Positions 958-50,460 are shown, counted from the stretch's first letter. The stretch is 64,000 nt of DNA from Ophelia neglecta (GCA_965285935.1 OZ260665.1:14384001-14448000); one strand, 5' to 3'. Program-made: numbers and translations. The notes: generated from the sequence alone by a model not told the origin.

Positions 958-2320
958 CCACCTGGGTGGAATCTTCTAAAGAGGCGCTCTTCGTCAGATC
1001 AGTGATAAAGTCAGGGGCGTTATCGTTAACATCAGTGATCTTGATGTTGACAACAGTAGTAGCAGTTCTTGATGGGGTCCCGCTGTCAGCACCGTGGACG
1101 GTCAGAGTGTAGAACTACAACAGAGAAAGACGCATGAACACTGACAACACCCAACATATTAATGCAGGACATTATTCCAGTGTCCTACAGCAGTCAGGAC
1201 GGCAAATGCTGGTATATCCATTGGATTTTGTGGCTAGCGAAATAGAAGTTGCTGCAGTAGGATTGATCTTTAGTTTGGTCAAGATCCAATGTGTACGCCC
1301 ACAATTGTGCTTTAATGTTGTTTTAGCAAATTAAGGAAGATGTATACAAATAATATGTATATATGTACCCATAGTTTAAAAATTCCTTATAATAACATAC
1401 CTAAAGAGGCACCAACATGTTATGGAAATACATTTTCGAAACATGACTTATAAAATTGGACAATGTCAAATTAAAGTTCACCATTAGACTTTTATATTTT
1501 AGTAATATTTATTTCTTTTTCTTGCCAGTTACTTTTCGGGTCCGTCTATGCCCGCATACTCCAGTTTTCATATCGTTTGCTTAGGCATTCCGCCATTGTT
1601 CATCTACGTTTTGTATTTTCTTAACTGTATTTAATTAGGATAAACTGGTTTATTTGCAATATGGTGCCTTACAAATCAATAAGTGGTCCCGGTGGAGAAT
1701 CATTCTGATGCAAAATAGACGTGATCGTTATTCAGGATTCGAAGAGGAATATTTATTTTACCTTACATACCTCTGATATGTTAACGCTTAAATGTAGGGC
1801 AGAGTAACCCAATTATATACAGTTGAGAAAGAACAAAATGTAGATGAACAATGTCGGAACGTCTTAGCATAATGATTTACTGATTTAGTAAAAGAAATAC
1901 CAAACGATATGGTTATTAGCTATATTCTAAATAGGTGTCACATTTCTTTTGCGATTTGTCAGCTTGACGCGCAATCTAAAAGGTTTTGGCGAAGTGCATT
2001 TAGCCTCTTGAAAAACCTAAATCAATTTTAGATATACACAAGCTCTATATATATGTTCTATTTTCGATAGAACTTGCCTCTGTTTCCTCCCTATCTACTG
2101 TTCCGCGCAGTCTCAGAGATCCAGTGAACTGCCCCAACGAAAACAAACCACCCATGTCGTCCAAAAGATTGTAGACGACAGTGTCCTGATCGGCGTCTGT
2201 GGCTTTTAATGTTAAAATATCAAGTGGAGGCATGGATGCTTCGCTCACTTCAACTGTGTTACTGGGGTTTGTGAATCGAGGACGATTCTGATTTGTCCTT
2301 ACAAAGGATATATCATAGTC
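958..2320 (-). CDS. Gene A: cadherin repeat and start of a second (exons 2078-2320, 958-1114)
   Basis: NQNRPRF...VEVSE...LKATDAD...VDREETE|FYTLTVHGADSGTP...ITDVNDNAPDF, the canonical cadherin Ca-binding motifs (DxD, DRE, DxNDNxPxF). Confidence 0.9.
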
Positions 2321-5300
2321 CTACAAAATAACATAGGCGGCATATTTAGTGAAATGCCCTTGCCACGAAGGATTCCTTCTATATACTCGGTTCAAGGCTT
2401 ATTGTTACTACCAATTAATATCTGGTCCGTACAAACTATTACAGTTTTATATCATTTGTATCATTTTGTATTATTTGAATTCAATTGTAGTCCTACAACA
2501 ACAAAACAACTGATGTTGGAATGTTGAACTGCTTACGATAATTAAGTTCTGTGGCAAATATTATCTTACATGTTCTCCTTCCGTCTCGAACAGGTCGAAT
2601 ATATGTAAATAATAATCCTTGTTAATTTCTGACACCCAACTGAAAGTAAACAGATTCCAAGAAGTCTATCATAATCTAAAAATGCAATGAAAAAAGCATC
2701 TCCATTACTGGTCGGATACTAAGTCATTAGAAGCTCAATTGAAATTAATCTAGTCATCCTGATTAGTGCGATTTATTGTTTTTTTTAAAAAAGGAAAATC
2801 TTGCTATTTAAGAACCATAAATATGTTGGATATTGGCATACACGTTAAATTCGGGGATGAGTTGTCGACCATCTTGCCTCAGGGCGCCCCCTACAGTCAG
2901 GGGTTGGTCTGTGTCGTATTTATAAAACATGTAGTTCCACCCTACTCGATGCTGCGTCACGAACGCCTATAATATAGATAATATAATATTAAACTTTTAA
3001 TAATATTTAATTTAAGTTTCATCGTAAGTCAATAGGTAAACCATGCAGTCGCTGCCAACATCGCAGATATTGGTAAAATTAGCAAACTTGATACCAAGTG
3101 GTACAAGGAACAACTTATTAAGTTGGTTTTTTCAAGTGAAGCCTATGAAATATAAAAACCAGGGGTGGCAAAGCGGGCCCGGTCTGCAACTGGGGTGATA
3201 TATCTCGAAGTATGCAACCCGTATATGCTCGGGAACTCAGAACATTGCTATCATGAATATAAACTTTACTATTGGAAAATCGAAATCATATCTATTGTCT
3301 AAAGACGTGAACTTCATTAATATGTATTTTCTTTTTGAAGACTATTATATCCAAATAGTAGCAACCATCAGATAGCTGCGATAACAGGCTTATTCTTCAT
3401 GTTGGTTTACTTACGGGGATACCCTTACCTTGATATATTGAGGTGTGCTTACCCTGATGTTTGTATACCTTACGGAATAAGCGGAGGTGATAGTGCTTAC
3501 CCTGATAGTGCTTACCCTGATGTTGGTAGTGCTTAGTGTCTCCAGCTTGGTAATATTACTGACACTAACGTTCAGAGGATCAAGGCCGCCGTCACTCAAA
3601 TAAACTCTGTTTGGAAGGCCCTGAAAACGACATATCCTGGTTATACTGGTTATATTAGAATCAAATTCATTAAACAGTATCCACTTCATTTTCACAAATG
3701 ATTGGACAACAAGTAATTACTTCAACCAGTATAGTTTATATGGACAGAAAATGATAATAGTTTTAAATTTCCCGTTTAAAATAATTAAAGCGCACGAATT
3801 AGTGTACGTGTTTACAACTCAAACGGAATCAATCCGGGTATATAAAGGGCATATCAAATTTGTTTGACTCCCTGAGTTTACGAGAAAAAAAACATATTCA
3901 AGATTGTCGCTTTATCCCATTATGATAATCAATTAAATAATGATGCTTCATTTTCATAAGGTTAATCCCAAATTATAGAAAATCTGTTCAAATGTTTTAA
4001 ACTATTGCTTTCTGGTTTTAATTAAGCTCTTGCAGTTGTTGCACCAAGTAATGTAAATCATTGTTTGAATAAAATCCAATTTGTATTGTCGTGCGCCTCT
4101 CCTTCTCTTAGTAGTAACCAGACACGATGCAGTCATTTCTCGTACCCAAATCTGGGTTACTGCGATGCCTTGCCCGACAGTTAGCTACGTAAGCGTATTT
4201 TTGAAATACTAGAAAACAATTTCGGGCTATGGATAATAGTTGCCTGAAATGGCTAGTAGTATATTCCTGTAAAACAGACTGCTTTTTGGGAATGGCAAAG
4301 GCCACAGGTCGTTAACAGTAACAATGTAGACTAGATGACAGTATGAAGAGCCTTGATGCAAGCCTAGCAAAAGGTTGACACTTTATAATATGTGAAATAC
4401 ATTCCGGAGTGGCAGCTTTTCTCAGAAATTAATTGATCGAAATGGTGATTTATTTTGTGTTGGTCGTTATGTTTGGTTTCAGTAACGAGAATAAGCCAAA
4501 CTCAATTACAAGTTTACATCCGATATCAAATTATATATATAAAATACATGTTAATGTTTACAGATTCCCATTTGATCTGGTATCCCTCACCAATGATAAT
4601 ATCAGAAATTGCTTGACCAAACCACCTATTATATTAGTATTTACGATATGCTGCAGTATTTTCCATACTACTTCATATACCGCATCAGAAAGGTGGGCCA
4701 TCGATATGGGCATATTTGAAATTTTTCAGACGTAACTATCACTGAACGAAAAATCATTGAGCGTTCATATATATTTAGTTTTGCGTCGAAATAATAATTC
4801 AAACACAAGACATCTTTTTTCTCAGGGTTAACGGTTTAACTACTTTCACTGGCCCTTGACTAGCCAGGTTTGTAATGTATGCATGTAAGAATACCTGAAG
4901 TCCTTGGGTGTCGATTGTCAGGAAGTCAGGCACTCCATCATCCCGAGGTTTGTCCACACGTACCACGTGTGACAGCTCGTGGAAGTTCACAGACTCCATT
5001 ATGGACAACTGATGATCTCCTTCATGGAACAGTAAAATGTATGTTATGGTCACGTGACTCAAACGTCATGCAATGTTCGATCAACGGAATTGTAACATGA
5101 ACGTATAGAATCGTGGAAATAAAAGAAGAACTTCTCTATTGCATTGATTAACAGGATCACATACATCTTCATTATTTGCATGGTGATAAATATGCACGCA
5201 AATAATGTGAGGTAGGATTGATGGAACCAAACCGAAATTAATGTATATAATGCTAGGACAAATCCATCAGCAACCGAATATAAAAATTCTGTTTTTCATT

Positions 5301-8300
5301 ACCGAGAGGATTGACATTTTCGAAAGAGGCTGAATAGTTAGAGAAAGTCCCTCGGAGTGATGACGTCATTAGCCAACGTGCCATCTTCGTAGTAAAAGGG
5401 TCAATGTCTCCGAAGTTGATTGTGAGTGAGGGTGATAATTGCTTAGATCCAAGCTGGGAGGATATCAGTTTGAAATTGATCAGGAGTCCTACAAGAGGAT
5501 AGTGAACAAGATGAACAAAGATAGAGCCGGCAAATACATTATTGTACCGAATATTATACACACATATACACCATTAATGTTAAGCCTAAACGAAATGCTG
5601 ACGTGTGGTTTGGAACCGTTATTAGCAACAGCATCAGTATTTACTTGGGCCAACAAATATGTATAATATTATTTACGAAATACGTTGGTATGCATTTTAA
5701 TTTTGTATATGCAACAAGTAAAACACTTATACACTGCCGTATGTGTGTGGACCATATTACGCATTACATAGTGCTAACGTAAATATAAAAATCTGCAGGA
5801 CCCCTGTAATAAAGAGAAGGCTGAAAGTCGAGGTCCATATATCTCAGCACCTGGCGGCTTGCAGACAGTCTCTGCTAGTAGCCGCTGCACATCTGTGGCG
5901 TGCTATTTAATACATCGTCATTTTAGACAGGAAGACATTAATACTGGCATGGTCTAACTTAGGATTACACACGACTTGTTATTATAGTCATTATTTAGAT
6001 AATATAGTGCAAAACACACTTTCCTTATAACCTACCCTTCTCATTTTCTACGATGGTCGGTTGCCCGGATGTGATTTTCAGTTGGTTGGCAGACCCATAT
6101 CCGGTGTTTGTTATGAGGATTCCAAGAGAAAACGGCACTGGCGGTTCTATATCTGAAACGTATATATTTAGCCATGTACCAGTGGATTATATGAATGCGA
6201 ATATATTCATTAGTTTGAACTTCGTTTTAACACATTTCAGATTGATCTGAAACGTATATATCAAGCCATGTACCAGTGGATTATATGAATGCGAATATAT
6301 TCATTAGTTTGAACTTCAGAACGAGTGCATATTGTAAGAATGTATACAAATGGATACAAACTCCATCAATATAATAAGAGGTAAACATGCGCATTTAAAT
6401 CGTAGCTACCGTCTGTGAATGGATTGTCTGATCGGACGTATTTCTCCAGAAAGTAGTTCAGATGCAATCGTGGATCTGGTTTGACAGTTACCTGTCAATA
6501 TAAAATATGGCGCGCCTTTATAAATGTTACTTTAAACTTAATAAGTAACATAATAAGTAATATTCTTATTGACGAATGATCAACCAGATACAGTGTTGGC
6601 GCATTTTTAAATGAAGCATTGGTCAGGATCTGTCTACATGCTCGAATTGCACTAATTAATATAACAGACTAATCACGTGAAATATAATAAATCGTTTTTA
6701 CCGTGTCGGGAAAAAGAGGGACGCTGATTTCATTTCCATCTACTGAGTAGAGTAGAGTCCCTCCGATGGCGTACTCCACGTCCTTGCTGGGAGCAGCCTC
6801 AGAGTAAGGTACGATAAGCCACACGGCTGTACCCTTCTCTTTGACCTCTAGCACGCCCGTGCCGTCCACTCCTGAAAGTCCTGTGAGCTTGGGATTTCCT
6901 GCAGATCAAACCAAAGCCTGTTATTTATTTAAACATATGTTATTTCCTTTAGGAAGGAAACGCATCATACATAATTCCTGAGATCTTTTCTTTCCGGTTA
7001 GCCAATAGTAAACTTAACATTTCTTCTTAGCAGTTTTTCTTTTCCACAGTATAATTGGGATCTACTTGTATTCCGTTAATCATAGAGTAAACACTAACTT
7101 TAGCTTAGACACATAAATCACAAATAGGCAAGATGTGTTTTGCATGCTACGACGAAAATATATTTGAATATCATTTTCTTTTCACCCGCTGAATGTCGAG
7201 GCTACCTCATAGGCAATGAAACCCAGTTTGTCGAGTTGCTTAACTTCCTCATAAATAACATTTTTGAGCACGTGGGTAGTGAGGTGTTTCTGCAAACTAT
7301 TGGTTTTCTAAATGGGTACCAACTGCCCTCATTTGATTGCAGTTTTGCATCTATTTACATACGAATATGATTTTATTACTAGTTTGCTGCCGGGTAGGAA
7401 ATTGCTCATAACTAGGAATGTTCTTCAATGAGTTATATAGATGATTTATTTTCATTTAATAACAAATTCTTCAGGCAATATGTTAGTGAAATTCACCATT
7501 TTTAGAACTCAAATGTAGATCGCATTCTAGCATTATTTTTGTTGTCCAGCGACGTTGGTTTTTAGTTTGACTCGTATCATGATAAATTGCTTTCAATTCG
7601 AAAGTGGTTACAAGTTTTGTTCAATTGTTCGTTCCTTTCAACAAATGGTTTGAGCATCATTGGATGATATTGGTATAAATGCATACCGGCTCGAACAACA
7701 TAATATATGGGTGAATAAATGACCTATTTCGTTTAAATTAAAAAAATACAAAGGCTATGCTGCCATATTATAGCAACAGCCTCTCGTTTGATCCGCCTTA
7801 GAACACAAACTATTAGACAGAAATGTATACACGAGGTAGCAATTACATGCCTTTGTAGCATTATTAGGATGCCTCGACAATGGACAGTTTTAAAACTTTG
7901 AGACGTGTCCGTTTGTATTATTAGTGGCCCGGCAAAAGTAAAGAAAACGATGTGCATATACTGTCCAAAACCAACCCTATTGAAAACTCATTGCTCAGCT
8001 GGCTGGGACCTATGTTTCGCGGACGGAGCACCTCGTAAACATATACAACTTATATTGAAGAGCCCGCTGTGGAAAGATATGATGCGTATCAATTGCAGTA
8101 AAAGTCCAACCTTCTTACCAATACTAAATTTCTCTGTGGCTATCTCTTTGGATTCTTCGTCTTTGATGTAGATCTCCACTTTGATGCCATCTAACCTTGA
8201 CGTATCGCCGTTATCGAGCTCCAATGTCGCCTCAAACGCTTCTCGAGTAATGACTAGGCGCTGTTTAATTTGTATCCGAACTTTTGCACATACACCTTCC

Positions 8301-38300: not shown

Positions 38301-41300
38301 TGGGTTGAGTTGAACATAGGATTTAGCAATGGTGAATGCGTCCTTGTTCTTATGGAATTGACTTCGTCTTACAGTTAGGTTTCCCTTACAGCCTTGTCCA
38401 TATTTCTGCATCATAAATCCTCGTCTATTGTGACCAGACAACGTCACATTTTCCAACAAGACATTCATGTCTTGGCGATAGAAGTAAAATACAAATTAAA
38501 CGTGAGAGACAAGAACAGATGCCTGTGGTCCGTATCATTAATAACATTAATAGCAATACTAGTAGAAACATGAGCGCACATAAATATTAAGCATGCATAT
38601 CTGTTAAATTGGCATTTCCAAAATATTAAGGTTTACTGTTTACCTATGGTGCAATCGACGCTCATCCCCAAATTATTATTTTCCAAAACCGTGTCCTTAA
38701 CTTCCACTGTCATATTTGCAGCGTATCTAGCTCCAAGGATAATCGTAAAATAATTGCCACTATTTTCTGTCAGTCTGTTGTTATATATGCTGACTTTTGA
38801 TGACGTGCGAGCCTTATCTTTGGAATGAACCTCGATGGATTTTGCATGGTTATGATTGAATTCACAATTATTTAGCACAAGGTCAGTGTTTCGAGGATAA
38901 ACCTGTAGTCCAGCCGATGTTGTTGCATTCACCACCACATCTGTTAGGGCCACATTCAGTCTGCCACCTTCGGTGTCCCGATCTAGGAAAATGCCCACGG
39001 AGGTGCCATTGAACGTACTCTTCGAGATGCTGAGATTACTCTCAAGATTCGACCAGACGGACCGTTGAGAATTCCCGCGAAATATGCTGTTCCCAATAGA
39101 AACTGTGCCGCCTGATGAAGTTGGTTTCACCTAGGATTCAAATTGAATGCTAACTGAGGTCAAACTGACGATATTTCTTGGTTTAACTTAATATTTACTA
39201 TTAACAGCGTATTATTACTTTGAAGTAATTTCAACAATACTCATAGAACTGTATGACTATACGGGGCTTGTCCCAGTTTGATAAATAACAATTCTCGAAT
39301 GGTATGATCTCATTGGTCATGAATTTGTGAGAACAGTGTGCAGCGCTATGCGCAGATTTTATCTGTACATTATCGTGGTTTGACAGTATGCACAGGAATT
39401 ACCTGAACTCCGTTTTGGTTGTAGATGAACTTTGCCCCGTGTATGTTCAAGGTGTCGACTTTTACCGTTACGGCGTTCAACGCACCCTCGACTTTCACAC
39501 CGGACAAGGTCACGTTGGTACAGGCTGCAAAACGATGTCAATCAAATTCAAATAGTATTACAGTTCGTTCTTTTGTAAATGTAAAAAAAAAATTAGTTAC
39601 GGACATATCCTCTGCGGATAAAAACCGCAGGCATCACGTTGCCCCTCACCTACTTGTATCTTGAGGAAATACGTCACCCAAAAAAAAAGCGTTAAAGAAT
39701 ACGCATTCTTTAACAGACAAAGCTAGCAGTAGCAACAAAATAAATTAAATAACATATATCTTTTTGATATTTGTAAAACACTCAGCATAAGGTTATTCAT
39801 AAAATACATGATATAAATTCAATAGAATATACTTTCCCATTACCAAATACTGATAGCTTCAAATAAAGTCAATTGATTTAATGTTCATTTATTTTATACT
39901 AAAAGTAAACGTACTTGATTTGCATTCATGCATTAAATCTAATATACTGTCCTGTTTTCGACACGTCGTTAATTTGACTATCTTAAGTAATCTTATTTTC
40001 TAATACACGACAAACCTGAACTTACACAACAATTGGATGTCAATTCCCTGCCAGCTGCCAACTCCATTAATGGTAGCTTTTAGATACCCAGGTTTGAAAA
40101 CGGTCATCAGGTCTGGCGTTCCCCGAGTATGTATACAACCTCCTGAAAGCATTGTACAAAAGTGTCAGACGGTATTTTGAAATATTCGACACAAAACTAA
40201 ATTGCACACCTGTACAATTATGCCAGTCCGTAGGGCTTTACAACCTCAAGATGTAACATGTAACATGCTACTGCACCCAGCCAAACAAAAATGGCGCAAT
40301 AATATAATGTAGAAGCTAACCCTTTACGGTAATGCCTGCTTCCTTGTTGGTGAACAGGACCTTGACCCCAGCGTCTATGGTCAGATCGCCACCGGCACCC
40401 AGAAGTATGCTTTTTGATATGACGTAAGGGCTAGCACTTAAATGCCATAATTCTTTGCTCTAAAAAAAAAGTTGTCGGAATTTATAATCATTACTTTTAC
40501 GCTGCTATTTGTAAATTGTGTATACAAATACAATACCCTTTCGGTAAATAATTTCTTAACCACGTATATTTTTGGTCCTTATGACAATGCGATTTATGAT
40601 TGGAGGCGAGGTACTTGACTAACAGTGATGTCCTGGTCTACCATGGTGGGAACAGTTGTTTCGTAGGTCGTACATCCATAAAGATCCAGTTTGACAGCTA
40701 TCCCCCTGTAATATGATCGTGGCAGCAAAGCCACGTAACGAGCCTGCGGAATAAAGAACAGACCTTGATTTGATATATTTGATTGTAGCCAGTTTTATAC
40801 CAGAACGCCTCAGAAGTTTAGACAACATATAAGATAAACTAATAAAAAACACACTCGCCACTAAAGCTGTTTGAATAGACTGTAATCATAACCAGTTGCT
40901 AAATTTAAGATATATTAACAACAGGAAAATTTAATAACAAAGCATATTACTGTAATAGATATAACGCATTGAAGTATACCACCATGCCATTTCATTGTGT
41001 CAACTTGGGTAAATATTACAATACTAAAAACGTGAGATTTGCCATTACTTTCGAAGAGCCATGTCATCCACCAAGTTCTACTGAAACGAATCTATTATAT
41101 TCAACTTCAACCGTTTACTTCTAAACGGAAACGCGAATAGGTCAAACATATTTTAAAGTCTGTTGTCATCAATGTGAATCCGATTTCCTCAATTTAAAAT
41201 TGACAAATTGTTGAACAAAATCAACACCTGCACCATAAAATAACAATATTCAAATTACTAGCCTTTATCGGTTTAGATAGCATGTTCGTTCGGGTGTGCA

Positions 41301-44300
41301 CTGGGTTGGAATTTCCGAGGAAATCCACAGGGACATCATTTTCCTGGTATAACGACCAATCCCATTGGTCAATGCTATAAGCTAATCTATATTGTGACAC
41401 CCAAGATCCATATGGCACAATTGCATCTGATCCTCTCGTCACCAGTCCTGTTACCATCGTTACATTTCTTAAGTCAATTCGCAACCATTGTTTAGAAAAT
41501 GATTTAGGTATCCATGCCTCTTCTCCTGTGAAGGTGGGATATAGAGGAACATAATTTGATTAGTAGTATAATATTTCATTGGGTTGTTTGGGTATTTGTA
41601 CCGTATGGGAAGTACTCGAACATGTTAGATGTTAGAACTGTTCTCACGATTACTTTAGATCAATTACATAAATCAGAAAAGTTAAACTTTACGTTAGAAG
41701 TAGCGGATATTATAGGTGACTAGCTATTACTGTCAGACGACATTCGAACCATTTTCAATCTAATGCTTCAAGATGTAAGACAGACGAAAACACATTCAAC
41801 GAAAACAGAGGTGTGTGTTAATGCTCGTACCGAATAGAGATATGTTCTGGGGTGAGCTGTCTTCGGATGAGGAGGAGAAATGGTCGGCCGGAAGATCGGC
41901 TACCCTGAGAGAGTTCACACAATCTATTTCCTCTGGAAGGGAATAATGGAACACATTCGGACGTATGCAAACGAAATTACCAAAGACCGACAAAGAGCTT
42001 CGGCATAGATGCCAAAGAACTTTAGCATAGACGGGCATATCTAGGTTATTTAGGAAATATTTTAACTCCGTATAAAAGCCACCTTAAAATCTTACTGCCA
42101 TGATAAAAGTAGTTCTGTTAGCTATAAGCAGATAGGGACCTACCTGGAAGGCTTTGGCAGATGAAGCCTTTTTTCTGTTTACACGGTCTACTCATCATCC
42201 TCATGTGATCATTTGTGGCTGGTGCGGTATGGTAGTAGTAATTGTCGATTTCTATACACTGCTCACCTAGATTCATTTGAATAGTTGACGTAACCCTTTT
42301 TTACGAAGATAATTTGGAACTTGCTGGTTACACATGGTTCAGCGAATGAAAAGATACAATAGAGACATTGGCCGCAGGTAGCCACTATTATTTATTGCCG
42401 CTCACGACAAGTTCTGCTCAAATTTAAAGTAAACACAAATGTTTGACTACTCTCTCTACAGTATATAATTATGTCGGCTTAATTAACATACCCGTTGATA
42501 TGATGTCTGAGTTGGGACTACAAGCATAACCTGATATAGTACGACACGATATGATCAGGTAAGATCAGTGCTCACACATTCATATGCACATTCAAACATA
42601 CGCGTTTGAATATAATTCATTGAATGGCTAAGATGTCTAGTCAGAATTTATAAAGTCAGCTCAGAATATTCTGCCATGAGTTGCTTAACAAGTCCTGGAT
42701 TTGTTCTTATACCTAGCCATTTGGGATCAAACCTAATCCTGGTCAATGGAAAGACAGATAATTTGGTCTCAGCTAATCGATCAAAGGCTCTCCTTAACTC
42801 TCAACGTAAGACCCCTTGCAGAAACCGGGCCCAACGTATTTACAAACTGGACATTTGGCAAAATATCATGATAAAAGTGCTAATCAAATAGCTCTACATT
42901 CCATAGGAATGTCTCTCCTTCTTACTTAGCGACAAATTGTCATGGTAAAAATTACGACTTACGAATATTTATAAACTACTTTCGAACATTTCATTTTACA
43001 GTATATTCGGTTTCTACACTTGCCTTTCGTTCAACACTGGCTTATTATGAACTAATGCTTTTTTTTTTATCCAATCCTACATGTTAATATAAATACATAT
43101 AATTATGATACTAACATATGAAATATTCCTACTTAAAAAATAAATTGTGTTTATGTGTCGTTAAACCCTAAAAATACAAATACTAATTCGTTCAACAAAA
43201 ATGTGTTTTATACCAATAAAGCTGCCTTTTTAACAACAAACTAAGGTATAAGCCTAGACAGATGTGAATAAAGATTTTCCCTACACTTGCTCATACCTAA
43301 GATATACATAACTTATACATCGGTCGTCATAAGCTGACCTTTGAAATGTTACCCTAGGTTGTGGCCCCATTAAATATCTGCTATCAGTATTATCACTGTA
43401 TCTAGCGTTTGCACAGTTCATCCTTCCATATTGCGTCGGACCGTTAATATAAACGTCGTTGTGGCTATTGTTCATTACCTGCTGTAATATTTTGACTCGG
43501 ATCTATCTCTGTTTGTGCTGGTTTGGAGGTGGTGCCACCTGTCCATACAGTTATCCGGTAATATCGGCCTACACCTCTCGCGCCTGAAAGAAAAGACAAA
43601 TAAGTCATGAGGTATATATTCACTTTGACTTCAAAGAAGATGGTTGGCTTAATACATAGCAGTTCCTAGATAATCTAATAATGCTGGGATCTGTGAAAAC
43701 AAGTTGTGGGTGGAACCAATCAACTTCTTTGAGTTAAAAATAGACCTCTTCAATAAGTAAACTGTTAGGCATATCGAGGGAATTCCGTACACAGCTGATC
43801 AAAACCAGTTGGCACAATAGAGTTTGAAACTCCATGTGTGTTTACGGTTGGCTGTATGCGGAAGAGGGCGGGGAAGGGTGGTGTGGGGTTGGGGTGGGGG
43901 GCGAGGCGCTTGTGATGAAGCGGACTAAAAAACCATATGACCCTCAAAAGTCAAGCCTTTCTACCTTTATCGATCCTACAATTTGATCGTTTAATCAATA
44001 GATTGTCACGTTCCAAGGCACTTCATAATAAACTATAACCAAAAAGAACACTTAAGAATAAAAAGAGGATTTCGTTGGCATAAATATGGTTGTTATAGTG
44101 ACAGCTATATTCATATATGCTTTATTTTACTAACAGTATGTTACTCGCGTGGTTAGGCCAAGAACAACATCACCTGGACATTAATTTGTTACAATCTGTA
44201 ATCGGGATTCAACGGAGAAAAACGGATAGCAAATTAAACTTATTATTCAACTGCTTGCTGCTTACTATTTACTGCTCCTATTAAACGGACATAACACGAG

Positions 44301-47300
44301 AGCACGTCGTACTTACTACTCTGAGGCAACAAGTAATTTTCAAGGGTTATTAGATCGGCCAGGGTAGATATCCTGTACAGCATTCCACTAAATTCTTCAT
44401 TGCAGCGTCTCTCGGCTTCGACTCGGGTAACTCCAGTTTGGTCCATGATCATAATCAAACGGCCACCAGAGGGCAGCAGGCCAGGATCGTTTGAAACATC
44501 ACCTTAGAAAACAGCACATTTTTATCTATTTATATCATATGGCACAGCTGTATTTATTCTTAGAAGTTTATTATCAATAATAAAGCACAATCAAACATTA
44601 TTTGCATTTCGAATATATGTATAAAGATAAAAACAAGAATATCCAAATGCTTCAATGCCAATCATATGTCTCCTGCTCTCGCTGCTCTCATAGTTCAAAG
44701 CATATCATGCATCATGTTGAATACATGGCTTTCAAGACCGAGATTGTAGGTGCTATACTGTCATGTCAGTTCGTAGGAAGAAACATTGTTTGAATAATCT
44801 GTCTTAGGTGTACAACTTACAAACCTCATTCGAAACAAGTTTGCAAAGTTATCAGCAAATCAGAATTCTACTCCCATCGAGCGTAGTTATGTTATCGGCC
44901 CAATTTAATGGAATGTGTCTATCTACTGTCCGCCGAGTATTCACTCACGCTACACACCAAAGCTGCGTTTAACTACCTGCGAAAACGCTTGATACCGGGA
45001 CCACTATTTGTCCCCGGCTTATGCCTCACTGGTGCCTAGCTGCTTTTGACTTAATTTGGCGAAGACAAAAGCAGGGTAGATAACAGCAGAAGAAAAGGAT
45101 GATGAATCAGTCAATAAAACTGCGTACATGCATGGTACTCCAACGAATAACCAGCTTACTTCGGTTATATGAAATCAAATATAACGCGAAATTCATCAAA
45201 TATTTGAAAAGGTAAAACGTTTGTGGAGGGGTTCCAGACAAATGACGTGTTGTGTCTGGCTCCTTTTTACAAGATTTGTCGACAAAAACGCAAAGTTCGT
45301 ATAGTGCAAACATGTCTCTCTGGCATGATGTTTTGATAATATAAACTTGCCGCGCTGTTTGGGAACGCTCTCTCTGTATTCGGCGAGGGCATGCCACATT
45401 GTTTGGGAACGCTCTTTGTGTATTCGGCGCTTCCCTGCCGCGCTGTGTGTGGACGCCCTCCCAGTATAAGTTGCCGCCATGCCGCGCTGTATGGGGACGG
45501 CCTCCCGTATTCGACGCCGCCCTGCTGCACTGTTTGGGGAGGATCGATGTCATGAAGCTACCGGCATGACCTATACATCAGAACATCTATGCTATAGAGT
45601 AGAAATATTCTTAGAGTCTACTTGGATCTGTGAAAAAAACATGAAGTGCGTATTGATGTATGGATGAAGGCGTTGTAAAGCTAATTTAGTGGTCAGTTTA
45701 GCCGGGAGGTCTAGCTTGCGTAGCGATATAATGCCAGGGAACTTAGGACAAATTTACGTTTTTCGCTGTAACTGGGAAATTATTGAAAAATGCCCCCGAT
45801 ATCAAAGATAAAGAATGTAGCCAATGACTAGACGCACATTTTAAGTCAAATCGGAGGTTCCTAGCCAGAATGAGTTGGGGCGATCGAAATTTTTGTTGAA
45901 ATGACGCGAGGCGTGCTTCAAAATGGTGTAGATTTTTTTTTGATAGATTACAAGGAAAAAAACAGATTAGTCAGCGTGCATGCCCGGCCAATGGCATGAA
46001 GCAATTCTTAAACACCGCATGATGGTATAACCAATAGGTCTTTTAGTAAAGGGCGAATAAGTTATGTTTGGAGTATTGCTCTCCATTATTTATGGTGTAT
46101 TGCTATAAGTTATTATTGGTGAATCATTATCAGATATTTTTGATGTATTGTTATCAGTTATTTATGATATATTGCTATAAGTTATTTTTGGTGTATTGCT
46201 ATAAGTTACTTTTTGTGTGCATTTTCATCTGTTATTTTTTGTGTGCATTGCTCTCCATTATTTTTGGTGTATTGTTATAAGTTATTTTCTGGTGCATTGC
46301 TATAAGTTATTCTGTGTGTGTACAGCTATAAGTTATTTTTGCTGTATTGCTATTTTTGCTATTTTTGATTTATTGCTCTAAGTTATTTCTGGATGCGCTG
46401 CTAATGTATATTTCAGTAATTCAGTTGTGTTTAAGCCTGCACTGCAGCGGCAGTGTGGATATCGATGGTCACACACCAGCGAGTTCAAAAGCCATGGACG
46501 CATTACACCTTTTTATATGCTTTTGTTGGCATGTGCGGAGATATATTTCACATGAATACTACAACGACATGGTATTTGTTGATAATAGCTGTCCACAGAC
46601 CGGACCAGTAAGATCTATTATTTAGATAACGGATATGAATCCTGAGTATATTGATCAATAAAGTCCTCAAGCATGTACAGGGCATGTACGGCCATATCGC
46701 CGTATTAGTATTGTTTTCAAGCTTATACTTATAATATGTTGATTATCATCTCAACATTCCGGTTATGATTATCAGCCCACTGTTAATATTCCACACATAA
46801 GCCCACCTGTGGTATTTCCCTAGGCCCAGCTCGAACAGGCTGCAATTCCCCAGTTTTGTAATCAAAAACAATACAAAAACATACATGTCTCGCTTTTTGG
46901 CGTGCGTCTGCCTGGGAAGGTTTGTTTTGCCGCGCATTGACAGACAACATTATATTTAAACACTGCAAAATGGCTGTTGGGTTGACTTCATATAATGTAG
47001 AAGCTATACAGACAGAGGTTGAACATAGCCAAATTAGCTGTACTTGTAGAATTAAAGTGTATTGTAAAGGATATGGTGTGTACGTTACAGGTGAATGCGT
47101 ATATATTCTAAAGTGGCGTATTAACATGTATGCTCCGCTAACTATTGTCAACATGTTGGTAGCCTGAGGTTGACCGAGCCTTAAAGTATACTGACTATTC
47201 GGGGATAATGTTCCAGCAGTTTTTCTCACCTAGATACGCATAAGACAGACAGGTGCATACGAATATTGTGTCTCCTTTCTGTAAGGTCCCAGGGAATCTA

Positions 47301-47666
47301 ACCCTGAGATAATATACCATGGCGACGTAATAAGCTAGCATTTTCAGACAGGGCATGTAATTAACAGGGATTTCTAGACCGGATTACTACTATATTAGAG
47401 TTTGTTTTCGAGACCAGTGTGCTTAAAATATTACGAATTTGAGACCTTGGACTCCCAAGTTTGGGTTATTTAAAATAGCATAGGGGCGGGTGGGGGATAC
47501 CTCCAATCAGCGGATCCAGACTCCTTTACCCTTAAAATCAGCTATCAGTCTAGGCACGGAATCCAAACTCACACAAGACCTGCACGTGGCACTCACCTTC
47601 AAGTCCTTGACAGGTGGCTAGCCCTAACACTGTACCCAAAAGCTTTATAATCCACAGGTGTCTCAT
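958..47666 (-). CDS. Gene A: giant multidomain extracellular protein (signal peptide, CTL, F5/8C, 4x parallel beta-helix units with SRCR, EGF, IPT, Ig-like, furin-flanked Cys-rich segment, bacterial-like module, cadherin); 77 exons, >=4,145 aa, 3' end unresolved
   Basis: 77 exons traced by hand with GT(or GC)-AG boundaries. Intron phases match at every junction and the summed 12,436 nt read without a stop. Recognisable domain motifs run across exon junctions (e.g. PIK|ARYV, DREETE|FYTLTV, IP|NRIFDNADD). Confidence 0.85.
2570..9260 (-). CDS. Gene A: conserved C-terminal module resembling large bacterial surface/secreted proteins (exons 9096-9260, 8806-8926, 8420-8485, 8119-8305, 6702-6898, 6410-6491, 6036-6152, 5303-5488, 4895-5019, 3516-3620, 2842-2966, 2570-2639)
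   Basis: GVCAKVRIQIKQRLVITREAFEATLELDNG; WLIVPYSEAAP; PDPRLHLNYFLEKYVRSDNPFT; EPPVPFSLGILITNTGYG; GQPTIVENEKGLLINF; ARWLMTSSLRGTF; FHELSHVV; DGVPDFL; NVW...LHIFD. Confidence 0.8.
6151..6317. repeat. 73-bp direct repeat (period 94) duplicating a splice acceptor of gene A
   Basis: ATCTGAAACGTATATA...GTTTGAACTTC at 6151-6223 and 6245-6317. Confidence 0.9.
9528..11873 (-). CDS. Gene A: Cys-rich segment bracketed by two RRKR furin sites (exons 11737-11873, 11273-11448, 10706-10922, 10381-10494, 9528-9710)
   Basis: GRRKR|S at 11753-11742 and QRRKR|Q at 9646-9635; 16 Cys counted in the ~196 aa between them. Confidence 0.75.
11737..16348 (-). CDS. Gene A: putative-Ig/dystroglycan-cadherin-like domain, further Ig-like beta-sandwiches and carboxypeptidase-regulatory-like domain (exons 16038-16348, 15447-15558, 14873-15049, 14623-14767, 14251-14417, 13774-14018, 13401-13558, 12622-12769, 12200-12443, 11737-11873)
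   Basis: PVIWRLSGNPSGMTMNDAGMVHW...YTLTVTCKNTYG; V.NVG motifs; EGATVKL...TNASGFVVFEGITENYYNL; TQVPIPVVTIDP...LTNHGLIKA. Confidence 0.7.
16458..19941 (-). CDS. Gene A: EGF-like repeats, IPT/TIG domain, EGF (exons 19765-19941, 19433-19593, 18771-18889, 18258-18352, 17874-17971, 17362-17494, 16458-16673)
   Basis: CSAHGDC..PDVCVCHEGWAGADC and further EGF repeats; IPT motif VTPERGPDTGGNLVHVFGHNF...YRCRF...IVCRAP...GRVRVSVS; GVCSKGRCVCIKPWRGDSC. Confidence 0.9.
20366..24188 (-). CDS. Gene A: parallel beta-helix unit 4 (exons 23985-24188, 23789-23862, 23331-23435, 23213-23269, 22783-23026, 22180-22398, 21763-21904, 21306-21524, 20948-21069, 20366-20483)
   Basis: IGGDVIGN...EPYIVTRSIYI...LILERGVTLKF...WHGL; NNTFYNN repeats; ends NIFINP...CPNNWWG. 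Confidence 0.8.
24541..33199 (-). CDS. Gene A: parallel beta-helix unit 3 with embedded SRCR (exons 33040-33199, 32795-32902, 32008-32106, 31603-31798, 31204-31349, 30803-30999, 28051-28253, 26903-27044, 26618-26737, 24998-25116, 24541-24729)
   Basis: IGGILQEDITL..GHPYEVVKDIEV...LEAGVELHF...WKGV; beta-helix repeats; ends APYNYWG. An L2 fragment sits in the 28254-30802 intron. Confidence 0.75.
28354..29715 (-). mobile_element. 5'-truncated L2/CR1-group LINE (reverse transcriptase, frameshifted) in a gene A intron
   Basis: QSAYKKFHSVET, LLDLSCAFDTVDH, GVPQGSVLGPLLF, YADDTQ, LHWLPV..RIQFK; frame break near 28830-28850; 3' UTR ending CGCTCTATAAAT and an (AATA)n tail at 28354-28370. Confidence 0.9.
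30235..30263 (+). repeat. AATAAA followed by (TTAC)n, probable 3' tail of a plus-strand retroelement fragment
   Basis: AAATAAATGAAATTACTTACTTACTTAC ending an AT-rich UTR-like stretch adjacent to the L2 insertion. Confidence 0.4.
31204..31798 (-). CDS. Gene A: SRCR (scavenger receptor Cys-rich) domain
   Basis: YRLSGSNTCSAGRLEVW...VCNSYWNQAMADQVCEQLGY...GC...C...C...ATVNC. Confidence 0.85.
33476..36872 (-). CDS. Gene A: parallel beta-helix unit 2 (exons 36593-36872, 36323-36406, 35836-36023, 35128-35406, 34735-34913, 33931-34116, 33476-33740)
   Basis: IGGKLTTDVTI...LSVGEGSVLYF...GILVEG...WGGL; NNTFADN repeats; ends GNYFDNP...QALRNWWG...KRIY. Confidence 0.8.
37017..37194. mobile_element. Tc1/mariner (pogo/Tigger-type) MITE, 178 bp
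   Basis: TA|CAGTGAAACCTG...CAGGTTTCAATG|TA terminal inverted repeats with TA target duplication; internal (A)GGTGGTCT sub-repeats. Confidence 0.85.
37260..40459 (-). CDS. Gene A: parallel beta-helix unit 1 (exons 40321-40459, 40026-40142, 39403-39524, 38644-39130, 38295-38470, 37727-37890, 37260-37398)
   Basis: Starts SPYVISKSI...LTIDAGVKVLF...GT...WQGI; Asn-ladder repeats (NNCEFNHN, ENNTFSDN); ends HNIFENP...DARHNWWG. Confidence 0.8.
40624..41932 (-). CDS. Gene A: F5/8 type C (discoidin) domain (exons 41831-41932, 41263-41525, 40624-40743)
   Basis: CVNSL...FSSSS...AWIP...QWLRIDL...VTGLVTRG...WVSQYRLAYSID...FLGN...PIKARYVALLP...IAVKLDLYGC. Confidence 0.9.
42144..44502 (-). CDS. Gene A: C-type lectin-like domain (exons 44317-44502, 43479-43583, 42144-42266)
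   Basis: VTRVEAERRC...GMLYRI...VWTGG...GEQCIEI...RPCKQKKGFICQ gives the CTL cysteine/WxGG pattern; all junctions phase 1. Confidence 0.8.
45231..46402 (+). mobile_element. Left copy of a non-autonomous repeat element with 44-bp and 24-bp minisatellites (gene A intron 1)
   Basis: 45231-45680 is the diverged reverse complement of 48775-49460 (both begin GTTCCAGACAAATGACG). 24-bp array at 46058-46402; the extra ~380 bp at 45680-46057 is absent from the right copy. Confidence 0.75.
46058..46402. repeat. AT-rich 24-bp minisatellite (inverted relative to 48505-48785), about 14 degenerate copies
   Basis: Unit TTATTTTTGGTGTATTGCTATAAG. Confidence 0.85.
47597..47666 (-). CDS. Gene A exon 1: signal peptide MRHLWIIKLLGTVLGLATCQG-LE
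   Basis: ATG at 47666; basic N-terminus, hydrophobic core, small-residue cleavage region; strong phase-1 donor GAAG|GTGAGT matching the phase-1 acceptor at 44502. Too short for the ORF track. Confidence 0.8.
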
Positions 47667-47799: not shown

Positions 47800-47956
47800 G
47801 CGGGACAGCTTCTAGTGTGTGACGGTTAAGGTTATATATATGCATCAAACATTGCAAGGCTATCCACAATAGAATTCTCTGTGAAGGCTTGAGGCCTGCA
47901 ACTTGCATCGATTTGACAAAGGCTTAATGTGTATTAAAATATTTTTGTGACGTCAC
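47800..47956 (-). promoter_or_regulatory. Putative core promoter of gene A: TATA box and CRE
   Basis: Minus-strand TATATATAA at about 47832-47840, ~170 nt upstream of the ATG; perfect palindrome GTGACGTCAC (CRE core TGACGTCA) at 47947-47956. Confidence 0.5.
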
Positions 47957-48070
47957 TCTTTATCAGAGGACAGTAGATTCGGAAGCATGAATGTACTGCT
48001 CATTGTCTCGAATCTACTGCTCATTGTCTCAAGCTTCACTATATGACCATGCAAATAATTTAAGTCGGAC

Positions 48071-48139
48071 AATTGACTCGGAGCGATAGATTCGTGCAGA
48101 TCGAATTCGACTGCACGAATCTACCGCTCCTCGTCAATT
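48071..48139. repeat. Near-perfect 69-bp palindrome centred on GAATTC
   Basis: AATTGAC-TC-GGAGCGATAGATTCGTGCAG-A-TCGAATTCGA-CTGCACGAATCTACCGCTCC-TC-GTCAATT; weaker symmetry extends to TTAAGT/ACTTAA. Confidence 0.9.
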
Positions 48140-48237
48140 CTCCTATACTTAATGTTTACGTGTACGTTATTTAACTTTTAATTGAAATAAACCATCTAGA
48201 AGCTTCGCGTCAGTTGTTAAAGCAGGAGTGATTAACA

Positions 48238-48504: not shown

Positions 48505-48785
48505 CTTGCAATACACCAAAAATAATAGATAGCAATACACCAGAAATAGCTGATAGCAATACACCAAAAATAATAGATAGCAATACACCAGAAATAGCTG
48601 ATAGCAATACACCAAAAATAGCTGATAGCAATAAACCAAAAATAACTGATAGCAATACACCAAAAATAAGGGATAGCAATACTTTAGAAATAGCTGATAG
48701 CAAAACACCAAAAACCAAAAATAACGGATAGCAATACACCAAATATAACTTAAAGCAATACACCAAAAATAACTTAAAGCAATAC
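48505..48785. repeat. AT-rich 24-bp minisatellite, about 11 copies
   Basis: Unit CAATACACCA(A/G)AAATA(GCT/ATA)GATAG; source of the spurious LVYCYQLF ORFs. Confidence 0.9.
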
Positions 48786-48957
48786 CTTCACACATACCTC
48801 GGTACGCACTTTTTCATGTTTTTTTTCACAGATCCAAGTTAACTCGGAGAACATTTCTACTTTATAGCATAGATGCTCTGATGTACAAGTCTTGCCGGTA
48901 CCTTCATGACATCGAGCCTCCCCAAACAGTGCCGCTGGGGGGGGGGGGGGGGGGCAC

Positions 48958-49345
48958 CGAATACAGAGACAGCGTTCACAAACAGTATGGCATAGCGACG
49001 TCGAATACAGGGAGGGCGTCCCCAAACAGGGCAGCAGGGCGACGTCCAATACGGAGAGGGCTTCCGCAAACAGAGCGGCAGGACGGCGCCGAATACGGAA
49101 AGGGCGTCCCCAAACAGAGCGGCAGGGCGGCGACGAATACGGGTGGGCGTCAACAAACAGCGCGGCAGGGCGGTGCCGAATACGGGTAGGATGTCCCCAT
49201 ACAGCGCGGCAGGGCGGTGCCGAATACGGGAAGGGCGTCCCCATACAGCGCGGCAGGGCGGTGCCGAATACGGGTAGGGCGTCCACAAACTGCGCGGCAG
49301 GGCGGCGCCGAATACAGAGAGAGCGTTCCAAAACAGCGCGGCAAG
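48958..49345. repeat. GC-rich 44-bp minisatellite, about 9 copies
   Basis: Unit CGAATACGGGAAGGGCGTCCCCATACAGCGCGGCAGGGCGGTGC; about 4 degenerate inverted copies at 45348-45540. Confidence 0.9.
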
Positions 49346-50164: not shown

Positions 50165-50460
50165 ATACATTCGTTGAACTGATCAACGTTGGTGTCAGGA
50201 GGTCAGTAAATGACTCCAAATTATGATTATTAATATTTCTTAATAAAACAACCCTCAATTGTATAATTAAACATATCTTAATTGTGTTCAGTGCTATAAG
50301 GATGTCTTTTTTCTTCAATAGAGACACACCACCTCCTGTCCTATTTGTTCGGCGCATATTTTCAGTCGAGTATATCCGTTATGTGTACAGATCAACAGAA
50401 TTCACACTGATCCCTGTCTCCAATAAAGCAACAATTGAAAATCCAAATTCACGGTTATTC
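50165..50460 (-). pseudogene. Degenerate LINE APE-endonuclease remnant
   Basis: FSIVALLETG...DLYT*...RTNRTGGGVSL and GVIY*PPDTNVDQFNE match APE motifs (I.lSETW, R..GGGV, IYRPP), with in-frame stops. Confidence 0.7.

What the first reader, a model, noticed from the sequence alone, without database searches (positions are those of the whole stretch)
958..47666. A >4,100-aa, 77-exon mosaic extracellular protein with an architecture matching no named family I know
Seen: 77 exons splice in one frame to give SP-CTL-F5/8C-(beta-helix unit)x4 with SRCR-EGFs-IPT-EGF-Ig-like-Cys-rich-conserved module-cadherin. Known: CTL, discoidin, SRCR and parallel beta-helix folds commonly bind glycans or microbes; EGF, IPT and cadherin domains typically act as stalks or adhesion modules. 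Inference: a giant recognition/adhesion platform (immune, matrix or adhesive) with a processed C-terminal half. The exons are small (57-487 nt), so automated annotation probably fragments it.
Basis: partly seen in the sequence, partly recalled or inferred. Interest (0 to 1): 0.85.

Follow-up and report, generated by a model that had tools for sequence, protein, structure and literature searches.

The report
Giant mosaic cadherin-tailed surface protein gene
The window holds most of one real minus-strand animal gene of about 79 small exons, coding a roughly 5,000-residue membrane-anchored surface protein that belongs to an unnamed, uncharacterised family found from choanoflagellates to hemichordates.

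Summary
On the minus strand, a Met and signal peptide at 47666 open a chain of about 73 GT-AG exons (about 4,200 aa) running to a donor at 962.

Exon-by-exon Pfam scans confirm discoidin, four right-handed beta-helix units, one SRCR, EGFs, IPT, EGF/DUF7949, He_PIG and cadherin. The C-type lectin call is supported only weakly.

The gene is not complete in the window. Six more exons just beyond the window start add about seven cadherin repeats, a Ser/Thr stalk and a GPI-like hydrophobic tail, giving about 5,030 aa in total.

The architecture is not unique. Collinear "uncharacterized" proteins exist in Saccoglossus, Lingula, Haliotis and Mytilus. The EGF-plus-module core is also found in crustaceans, a rotifer and the choanoflagellate Monosiga.

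The two parts I folded (about 780 aa) are tandem beta-sandwiches. The module aligns collinearly at 25-33% identity with giant surface proteins from metagenome contigs; bacterial CARDB proteins match its last third. Animal members carry two conserved furin-type sites, which supports the "processed" idea.

Two paralogs on the same chromosome keep the CTL, discoidin and module order.

No RNA data were available, so the single-transcript reading is inferred. Function is inferred as a glycan-recognition and adhesion platform.

The parts
47597..47666 (-). Exon 1: start Met and signal peptide (MRHLWIIKLLGTVLGLATCQG), donor AAG|gtgagt
   Evidence: The region is single copy in the genome apart from a 220-bp dispersed repeat upstream.
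42144..44502 (-). Three exons (44502-44266, 43583-43479, 42266-42144) coding a C-type-lectin-like domain. All three are phase-neutral.
   Evidence: No Pfam hit on the exon pieces. Atlas features: 26 of 30 named hits are Lectin_C, score 0.91. The only two relatives of exon 2 in the genome lie at the two paralog loci, just upstream of their discoidin exons.
41245..41932 (-). Discoidin (F5/8 type C) domain, two exons
   Evidence: Pfam F5_F8_type_C 1.2e-13. HSPs to Saccoglossus and Haliotis homologs.
37260..40743 (-). Beta-helix unit 1 (includes the 487-nt exon 39130-38644). Ends with an NWWG motif.
   Evidence: Pfam Beta_helix 1.3e-7. Atlas beta-helix clusters. NWWG at about aa 781.
33476..36872 (-). 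Beta-helix unit 2. Ends with NWWG.
   Evidence: Beta_helix 7e-5 and 4e-4. HSPs from up to 16 homologs at 33748-33422.
31204..33199 (-). Cap/linker exons (33199-32795) and the single SRCR domain (32106-31204)
   Evidence: SRCR and SRCR_2 2.2e-6. Homology blocks at 33205-33047 and 32909-32778.
24541..30999 (-). Beta-helix unit 3. Ends with NYWG. Its 2.5-kb intron holds a LINE-type reverse-transcriptase ORF.
   Evidence: Beta_helix hits at 28047-28298, 26777-27115 and 24997-25140. RVT_1 3e-21 at 28774-29718.
20366..24188 (-). Beta-helix unit 4. Ends with NWWG.
   Evidence: Beta_helix at 22782-23048 and 22173-22415. HSPs at 24193-23772 and 20500-20354.
18258..19941 (-). EGF cluster (teneurin-type and laminin-type EGFs), four exons
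   Evidence: EGF_2, EGF_TEN, EGF_laminin. HSPs from all 17 animal homologs that gave matches.
17362..17971 (-). IPT/TIG domain, two exons
   Evidence: TIG 4.3e-5. HSPs.
16010..16673 (-). EGF/DUF7949 exon (16673-16458) and He_PIG Ig-like exon (16348-16010)
   Evidence: DUF7949 1.3e-6. He_PIG 9e-4, below the curated cut-off. Strongest HSPs, up to 80 bits.
4805..15049 (-). The 'conserved module': about 19 exons and about 1,150 aa. The folded parts are tandem beta-sandwich domains; the stretch between them is Cys-rich. Exon ends at 12769-12200 and 5488-4805 are uncertain.
   Evidence: Collinear HSPs and local profile hits for 11867-8261. Single 1,130-1,370-aa alignments at 25-33% identity to unnamed giant proteins. 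Named bacterial CARDB proteins cover 24-39% of the query. AF2 models of homolog segments, pLDDT 81-82, are all-beta. Only generic Ig-like fold matches.
11742..11753 (-). First RRKR furin-type site
   Evidence: The dibasic column conserved in most animal homologs lies 12 residues upstream of it.
9635..9646 (-). Second RRKR furin-type site
   Evidence: Aligns exactly with the conserved 'rrrr' column of the family profile.
962..3620 (-). Linker and the first cadherin repeats (exons 3620-3453, 2966-2842, 2639-2570, 2320-2099, 1114-962). The gene continues in L002 (G000:C8:14374001-14384000).
   Evidence: Cadherin 1.7e-6 at 2048-2320. DVNDNAP motif in 1114-962. No Pfam hit for 3716-3414 or 2966-2811. 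Downstream exons on L002 minus, about 9589-5641, carry Cadherin 7e-38 and further hits.

Best explanation
This is one intact, very large protein-coding gene on the minus strand. It has about 79 exons and codes about 5,030 aa. About 73 exons lie in the window and six lie just beyond its start.

The product is a secreted, C-terminally membrane-anchored surface glycoprotein. From the distal tip to the membrane it reads:
- signal peptide
- a C-type-lectin-like domain
- discoidin
- two right-handed beta-helix units, one SRCR, then two more beta-helix units
- EGFs, IPT, EGF/DUF7949 and an Ig-like He_PIG domain
- a module of about 1,150-1,250 aa, tandem beta-sandwich domains where folded, with a Cys-rich stretch and two furin-type RRKR sites
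- about nine cadherin repeats
- a Ser/Thr-rich stalk and a hydrophobic tail with no cytoplasmic domain, which looks like a GPI-anchor signal

Shown here: the exon chain, the domain content, collinearity with homologs, the dibasic sites, the tail and the paralogs.

Inferred: a single transcript. Convertase cleavage giving a head fragment and a membrane-bound cadherin fragment. GPI anchoring. A working mode in which the long rigid stalk presents a glycan-binding head (beta-helices, discoidin, lectin-like, SRCR) for cell-cell, cell-matrix or cell-microbe recognition.

The gene belongs to an unnamed family. The core of that family (EGF, then the module) is found in animals and a choanoflagellate and has bacterial relatives. 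The head domains vary between lineages.
For: - Strand, start and exon chain with no internal stop.
- Pfam on single exons.
- Collinear homologs: tblastn HSPs of Saccoglossus XP_006822956 (41 HSPs, window 41550 to 4898), Lingula XP_023932459, Haliotis and others run across beta-helix, EGF, IPT, He_PIG and module.
- Same Pfam order in Lingula, Haliotis and Mytilus proteins, with a cadherin near the C-terminus of Mytilus P0158 and a cadherin-23-like stretch near the C-terminus of Haliotis P0056.
- Continuation outside the window: cadherin exons (7e-38) and a tail ending ...SSSHMTISCLSTLLLFLAIAFKFV-stop.
- The same kind of tail in Mytilus, Haliotis and Sinanodonta homologs; TM plus a short tail in Mercenaria, Saccoglossus and Oscarella.
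- Two dibasic columns conserved in animal members.
- Module segments fold as beta-sandwich arrays.
- Two paralogs on the same chromosome keep the order CTL exon, discoidin exon, module exon on one strand.
- Other family members carry different glycan-binding heads on the same core, for example WSC domains in Monosiga.
Against: - No RNA run of this organism could be found. No splice junction, transcript end or expression is therefore verified.
- Several exon boundaries are uncertain: about 40209-40026, 33740-32786, 12769-12200, 5488-4805, and L002 around 8608-8322. The length ranges from 4,990 to 5,085 aa depending on settings.
- The CTL domain has no Pfam support and is absent from the homologs seen in other phyla.
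- Exon 1 lies between two 1.2-kb inverted satellite arms.
- GPI anchoring, furin cleavage and ligand binding are sequence-based guesses.
- Fold matches of the module are generic (Z 7-9, TM about 0.2) and give no function.
Confidence: 0.72

Rival explanations
1. The stretch holds two or more independent genes that my model and the reader's model join wrongly. One case is a small secreted C-type lectin (exon 1 plus the CTL exons) upstream of the giant gene. Another is a separate cadherin gene downstream of the module.
For: There is no transcript evidence. Homologs in other phyla start with a signal peptide directly followed by discoidin and have no CTL. The CTL exons are all phase-neutral, so they can be dropped without a frame change. 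The intron before the first L002 cadherin exon is about 1.4 kb. Pieces 3716-3414 and 2966-2811 have no Pfam hit.
Against: The CTL-like exon has only two relatives in the 762-Mb genome. Both lie 1.5-2.5 kb upstream of the discoidin exon of a paralog, on the same strand. The discoidin exon at 41932 starts at an acceptor and has no convincing signal peptide of its own. Cadherins near the C-terminus occur in Mytilus, Lingula and Haliotis family members. Phases fit through all junctions with no stop.
Confidence: 0.12
2. It is the ortholog, or a close relative, of Drosophila Bark beetle/Anakonda and works at tricellular septate junctions.
For: Bark/Anakonda is a giant surface protein described with SRCR, parallel beta-helix, CUB and C-type lectin domains (PMC5509417, PMC8006247). 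The N-terminal half here has SRCR, beta-helix units and a CTL-like domain.
Against: [quoted passage not shown] Here there are four beta-helix units, one SRCR and one CTL-like domain. No CUB appeared in any tested exon piece. The EGF, IPT, module and cadherin parts are not listed for Bark. The protein ends in a hydrophobic tail. No homolog found carries a 'bark beetle' name. Direct sequence comparison with Bark was not possible.
Confidence: 0.06
3. It works mainly as a shed immune pattern-recognition molecule. Convertase cleavage at the two RRKR sites releases the roughly 3,300-aa lectin, SRCR and beta-helix head as a soluble opsonin or agglutinin, and the cadherin part is only a carrier.
For: CTL-like, discoidin and SRCR domains are common in invertebrate immune recognition proteins (general knowledge). 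The dibasic sites are conserved. Local expansion to three paralogs at about 55-71% identity fits a diversifying recognition family.
Against: No expression or inducibility data exist. The core is conserved back to choanoflagellates, and nine cadherin repeats suggest a structural or adhesive role. About 10 Cys are conserved around the sites and may keep the fragments together.
Confidence: 0.2
4. It is a decaying or non-functional copy (pseudogene), and the open frame is an artefact of a model that picks splice sites to avoid stops.
For: The model was built to maximise an open frame. Some splice sites score poorly. One paralog shows in-match stop codons.
Against: About 43 in-window exons carry independent homology in the predicted frame. 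Long exons of 487 and 1,032 nt are open. Conserved Cys, motifs and dibasic sites are kept. All introns are GT-AG.
Confidence: 0.04

Closest known systems
Uncharacterised homologs: Saccoglossus kowalevskii LOC100371179 (XP_006822956.1), Lingula anatina LOC106176343 (XP_023932459.1) and LOC106155684, Haliotis rufescens LOC124124111, Mytilus galloprovincialis LOC143063814
   Same: Collinear discoidin, beta-helix units with one SRCR, teneurin-type EGFs, IPT, EGF/DUF7949, He_PIG, the roughly 1,250-aa module with two dibasic sites, and then (in Mytilus, Lingula, Haliotis) cadherin and a hydrophobic tail.
   Different: Only about 40% identity. None has the N-terminal CTL-like domain. The number of cadherins differs (one Pfam hit in Mytilus against about nine here). 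Saccoglossus has the module three times. None has a known function.
Monosiga brevicollis MONBRDRAFT_24936 (XP_001745227.1), Adineta vaga UJR06540.1, Macrobrachium rosenbergii XP_066948200.1
   Same: They share the module. In the tree of its last 410 aa, the two crustaceans fall in the 28-row animal group. Adineta is its sister and Monosiga sits just outside in an unresolved fork. All are separated from the named bacteria. Monosiga and Adineta also carry EGFs before the module.
   Different: The heads differ: WSC domains in Monosiga, long EGF/IPT arrays in Adineta, no beta-helix or SRCR. No cadherin tail was seen.
Giant bacterial surface proteins annotated 'CARDB domain-containing' (for example Rubripirellula lacrimiformis and MAGs of Verrucomicrobiota, Kiritimatiellia and Sedimentisphaerales)
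   Same: They match the module of Haliotis P0056 at E down to about 1e-121, and the conserved Cys are kept. Unnamed giant proteins from metagenome contigs align in single stretches of 1,130-1,370 aa at 25-33% identity.
   Different: The named bacterial proteins cover only about 24-39% of the query, mostly the last third. They have no EGF, IPT, beta-helix/SRCR head or true cadherin tail. Several of the more distant relatives lack the dibasic sites. They separate from the named animal proteins by one branch (SH-aLRT 92).
Drosophila Bark beetle / Anakonda
   Same: A giant surface protein that combines SRCR, parallel beta-helix and C-type lectin domains (PMC5509417, PMC8006247).
   Different: It has a tripartite repeat, a CUB domain, a TM segment and a PDZ-binding tail. 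It has no EGF, IPT, module or cadherin part. Homology was not tested here.
Teneurins
   Same: The EGFs here match the teneurin EGF models best. Teneurins are also holozoan surface proteins with a large part related to bacterial surface proteins (PMC3278476; bioRxiv 10.1101/2025.11.11.687626).
   Different: There is no YD shell, NHL or toxin-like domain here. EGF_TEN scores (26-30 bits) are far below that model's cut-off of 65. Topology is type I or GPI-like, not type II.
T-cadherin and giant atypical cadherins (FAT, Dachsous, cadherin-23); from my own knowledge
   Same: Tandem extracellular cadherin repeats with DxNDN calcium motifs. T-cadherin is GPI-anchored and has no cytoplasmic domain.
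   Different: None of them carries a beta-helix, SRCR or discoidin head, or the beta-sandwich module, N-terminal to the cadherins.

Membership tests
Unnamed family with a beta-helix/SRCR head, EGF-IPT and the beta-sandwich module (Saccoglossus, Lingula, Haliotis, Mytilus type) | Collinear order: discoidin, beta-helix units with one SRCR, EGFs, IPT, EGF/DUF7949, He_PIG, module | tested here: met
   Exon-wise Pfam. Collinear tblastn HSPs of 17 animal homologs. Same order in Pfam scans of the homologs.
Unnamed family with a beta-helix/SRCR head, EGF-IPT and the beta-sandwich module | Complete module of about 1,250 aa with its conserved Cys and motifs | tested here: met
   HSPs from 15049 to 4805 and profile hits collinear over 11867-8261. 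The query exon at 12182-12520 found 1,483 proteins at E<=0.001.
Unnamed family with a beta-helix/SRCR head, EGF-IPT and the beta-sandwich module | Two dibasic (R-x-K/R-R) sites flanking the Cys-rich stretch | tested here: met
   RRKR at 9646-9635 aligns to the conserved column. RRKR at 11753-11742 lies 12 residues from the other. Cleavage itself was not tested.
Unnamed family with a beta-helix/SRCR head, EGF-IPT and the beta-sandwich module | C-terminal membrane anchor (hydrophobic tail, or TM plus a short tail) | tested here: met
   The last exon on L002 ends in an 18-residue hydrophobic tail after an S/T-rich stalk. Homolog tails compared. A GPI anchor against a TM segment cannot be told apart with these tools.
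Cadherin superfamily | Tandem extracellular cadherin repeats with calcium-binding motifs | tested here: met
   Pfam Cadherin 7e-38 (three repeats in one exon) and five further hits. Four DVNDxxP motifs.
Classical cadherins | Cytoplasmic catenin-binding domain | tested here: not met
   The ORF stops directly after the hydrophobic tail.
Bark beetle / Anakonda | [quoted passage not shown] | tested here: not met
   One SRCR, one CTL-like domain, four beta-helix units. No CUB in any exon piece scanned. The protein ends in a hydrophobic tail. Definition taken from PMC5509417.
Bark beetle / Anakonda | Sequence homology of the beta-helix/SRCR units to Bark | not tested
   No Bark sequence could be obtained. 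The word-indexed search is too insensitive for this.
C-type lectin-like domain | Match to the Lectin_C profile, with the conserved Cys and WIGL framework | tested here: inconclusive
   No Pfam hit on three exon pieces at E<=10. Atlas features point to Lectin_C clusters at 0.91 with 133-150 shared features over the three top hits, which is lead level. By eye, motifs such as EAERRC...L, VWTGG and C...C....FICQ are present. The joined domain was not searched.
Teneurin | YD shell, NHL and FN-plug after eight EGFs; type II topology | tested here: not met
   Only EGF-level similarity below the EGF_TEN cut-off. There is an N-terminal signal peptide.
Fibrocystin / PKHD1-like | IPT arrays with G8 and PbH1 domains | tested here: not met
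   A single IPT, placed after the beta-helix units. No G8 hit in the scanned pieces.

The most novel reading that the evidence does not exclude
This gene would represent an unrecognised, ancient branch of the cadherin superfamily. The branch combines a GPI-anchored cadherin stalk with a roughly 1,250-aa beta-sandwich core shared with giant bacterial adhesins. That core would have been gained once, before animals arose, as proposed for teneurins, and in animals it is cut at two conserved furin sites. Lineage-specific glycan-binding heads (WSC in choanoflagellates; beta-helix, SRCR, discoidin and lectin in bilaterians) would make it a modular self/non-self or matrix recognition system.
Probability: 0.3. 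Interest if true: 0.7.

Novelty: new variant of a known kind. Interest (0 to 1): 0.5.

Why it matters
Giant mosaic surface proteins are common in invertebrates. This one belongs to a family that is conserved from choanoflagellates to hemichordates and still has no name, no structure and no known function.

Three features give concrete handles for experiments:
- the bacterial-type core
- the two conserved convertase sites
- the interchangeable glycan-binding heads

The family may bear on how early holozoans assembled adhesion and recognition molecules from bacterial and eukaryotic parts.

For genome annotation, the result shows that the gene continues beyond the window and that three paralogs lie on one chromosome.

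Tried and rejected
The cadherin motif on the reverse strand showed the true orientation.
- Over-fitted model: a low intron penalty added 7-14-nt micro-exons and ran past the natural stop. I discarded it in favour of models with a minimum exon length of 40 nt.
- HExxH idea: HELSH in window piece 5065-4802 suggested a metalloprotease. The motif is not conserved across 32 homologs, so I rejected it.
- PDB by sequence: no informative match for the module. Fold searches gave only generic Ig-like or beta-sandwich matches.
- Pfam for the CTL pieces: nothing, even at E<=10.
- RNA evidence: the look-up of sequencing runs listed three runs, none on record as RNA.
- Was exon 1 inside a transposon? Only a 220-bp piece upstream of it is repeated in the genome.
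- Bark beetle homology could not be tested. The N-terminal search returned 9 proteins, none named.
- Papers: searches found no description of this family.
- Earlier notes of this scan: none.
- The joined (spliced) protein was never sent to any search or fold tool. All database work was done exon by exon, by reference, or on database homologs. The joined translation was used only inside my scripts, to count length and locate short motifs.

Full report
**Orientation and start.** Long plus-strand ORFs looked non-coding. Reading 900-1114 on the reverse strand gave TVHGADSGTPSRTATTVVNIKITDVNDNAPDF, a cadherin repeat end. Minus-strand open frames then showed many domain-like pieces. The Met at 47666 opens MRHLWIIKLLGTVLGLATCQG, which looks like a signal peptide. 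The gene therefore runs from 47666 down to, and past, 958.

**Gene model.** I wrote a small splice and codon dynamic-programming model. It was self-trained on the minus strand and later guided by tblastn matches.
- Without homology it gave 73 exons and 4,122 aa in the window, with no stop.
- With homology, a minimum exon length of 40 nt, and the flanking DNA added, it gave 78 exons.
- I added the phase-neutral exon 42266-42144 by hand. The model then has 79 exons and about 5,030 aa (4,990-5,085 by settings). Of these, 73 exons and about 4,200 aa lie in the window.
- In-window exons are 66-487 nt. Introns are 49-3,094 nt with a median of about 305, and all are GT-AG.
- A low-penalty run over-fitted with micro-exons and was discarded.
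- Boundaries near 40209-40026, 33740-32786, 12769-12200, 5488-4805 and the first two L002 exons remain unsure.

**Domains, exon by exon (Pfam).**

| Domain | Window coordinates | E-value |
|---|---|---|
| F5_F8_type_C | 41224-41559 | 1.2e-13 |
| Beta_helix | 38636-39130, 35809-36045, 33410-33766, 28047-28298, 26777-27115, 24997-25140, 22782-23048, 22173-22415 | 1e-7 to 1e-2 |
| SRCR | 31602-31841 | 2.2e-6 |
| EGF_2 / EGF_TEN / EGF_laminin | 19941-18231 | about 2e-7 to 5e-5 |
| TIG | 17335-17559 | 4.3e-5 |
| DUF7949 / EGF | 16401-16673 | 1.3e-6 |
| He_PIG | 16004-16348 | 9e-4 |
| Cadherin | 2048-2320 | 1.7e-6 |

Four NWWG/NYWG motifs, at about aa 781, 1277, 1849 and 2336, close the four beta-helix units. 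The SRCR sits between units 2 and 3.

The CTL pieces gave no Pfam hit even at E<=10. Atlas language-model features put exon 44500-44267 with Lectin_C clusters (26 of 30 named hits, score 0.91). That is a lead only.

**The gene leaves the window.** The window is G000:C8:14384001-14448000. In the 10 kb before it (L002), the minus strand carries six further exons.
- One roughly 1-kb exon holds three cadherin repeats (Pfam 7e-38).
- Four more pieces have Cadherin hits.
- The last exon ends in a Ser/Thr-rich stretch followed by ...SSSHMTISCLSTLLLFLAIAFKFV and a stop.

A hydrophobic end with no cytoplasmic tail looks like a GPI-anchor signal; this is inference. Homologs from Mytilus, Haliotis and Sinanodonta end the same way. 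Mercenaria, Saccoglossus and Oscarella homologs have a TM segment and a short tail.

**Relatives.**
- One module exon (12182-12520) found 1,483 proteins at E<=0.001.
- Laid back on the window, Saccoglossus XP_006822956 (7,485 aa) gives 41 collinear HSPs from 41550 to 4898. Lingula XP_023932459, several Haliotis proteins, Mytilus, Sinanodonta, Mercenaria and others do likewise, all at about 40% identity.
- Their own Pfam order is discoidin, beta-helix with one SRCR, EGF_TEN, TIG, then the module. Mytilus P0158 has a cadherin near its C-terminus, and Haliotis P0056 has a cadherin-23-like stretch near its end.
- All are named 'uncharacterized'. An Oscarella protein combines beta-helix, SRCR, EGF and cadherin but did not match the module.
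- The module also occurs in decapod crustaceans, a Mya 'WIF1-like' protein, the rotifer Adineta and the choanoflagellate Monosiga. In Monosiga the head is made of WSC domains.
- Paper searches found no description of the family.

**The module.**
- Proteins named as bacterial (Rubripirellula, Fuerstiella, and Verrucomicrobiota, Kiritimatiellia and Sedimentisphaerales MAGs, mostly 'CARDB domain-containing') match at E down to about 1e-121. They cover only about a quarter to two fifths of the query, mostly its last third.
- An HELxH stretch is not conserved. There is no PDB match by sequence.
- AlphaFold models of two homolog segments (pLDDT 81 and 82) are all-beta. They match only generic tandem Ig-like or beta-sandwich structures such as pilins, integrin legs, macroglobulin domains and adhesins.
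- A local profile of the less conserved middle part recovers the window exons from 11867 to 8261 in order.
- About ten Cys are conserved in both kingdoms. Two dibasic columns are conserved in nearly all animal members. The window has RRKR at both places, one aligned exactly and one 12 residues off.
- In a quick tree of the last 410 aa, 17 named animal rows and 9 named bacterial rows separate at one branch (SH-aLRT 92). Monosiga and Adineta lie next to the animal group. The root is unknown, so no direction of transfer can be claimed.

**Paralogs.** The module exon, the CTL-like exon and the discoidin exon each have relatives at just two other loci, both on chromosome C8. One discoidin match on C9 is weak.

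| Locus | Strand | CTL-like exon | Discoidin exon | Module exon |
|---|---|---|---|---|
| Paralog A | + | 14284069 | 14285580 | 14312719 |
| Paralog B | - | 13744461 | 13741884 | 13704526 |

Identity is 55-71%. This repeated linkage is the best available evidence that the CTL-like domain belongs to the gene. Paralog B shows stop codons inside two matches.

**Limits.**
- No run on record as RNA holds this locus. Splicing, transcript ends and expression are therefore unverified, and read laying was not used.
- The joined protein was not searched or folded. All searches used single exons by reference or database homologs.
- Homology to Drosophila Bark beetle/Anakonda could not be tested. Bark is described with SRCR, parallel beta-helix, CUB and CLECT domains, a tripartite repeat and a PDZ-binding tail (PMC5509417, PMC8006247). 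The defining triple repeat and tail are not met here.

**Verdict.** This is a real, apparently intact giant gene and a member of an unnamed, uncharacterised holozoan family. It is best read as a membrane-anchored stalk (cadherins, a beta-sandwich module, and EGF/IPT) that carries a glycan-binding head and is probably cut by convertases. Interest is moderate.

Noticed in passing
window 28491-29718 (minus strand): A non-LTR retrotransposon reverse-transcriptase ORF (315 aa, RVT_1 3e-21), plus a following 129-aa ORF. It lies inside the 2.5-kb intron of beta-helix unit 3, on the same strand as the gene.
   Followed up: partly
window 45231-46392 and 48508-49460: Two arms of about 1.2 kb, 73-90% complementary to each other, each made of a 44-bp and a 24-bp tandem repeat. 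They flank the 2.1-kb stretch that holds exon 1. The long multi-frame ORFs at 48.8-49.5 kb are artefacts of these satellites.
   Followed up: partly
window 47929-48155: A dispersed repeat of about 220 bp (SINE- or MITE-like) with more than 40 copies at 77-92% identity on many chromosomes. It lies 260 bp upstream of the start codon.
   Followed up: partly
G000:C8:14284069-14312991 (+) and G000:C8:13704526-13744688 (-): Two paralogs of the gene on the same chromosome with the same CTL, discoidin and module order. The second has stop codons inside two exon matches and may be decaying.
   Followed up: partly
L002:147-361 and L003:6922-9555 (plus strand; window coordinates -9659 to -13078): Weak plus-strand matches (E 1e-4 to 5e-3) to SRCR and beta-helix parts of the homologs. 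They suggest another gene with related domains, convergent with this one.
   Followed up: no
window 49600-64000: The ten long ORFs tested, most of them from this stretch, gave no Pfam family. I recognised no gene upstream of the start.
   Followed up: partly
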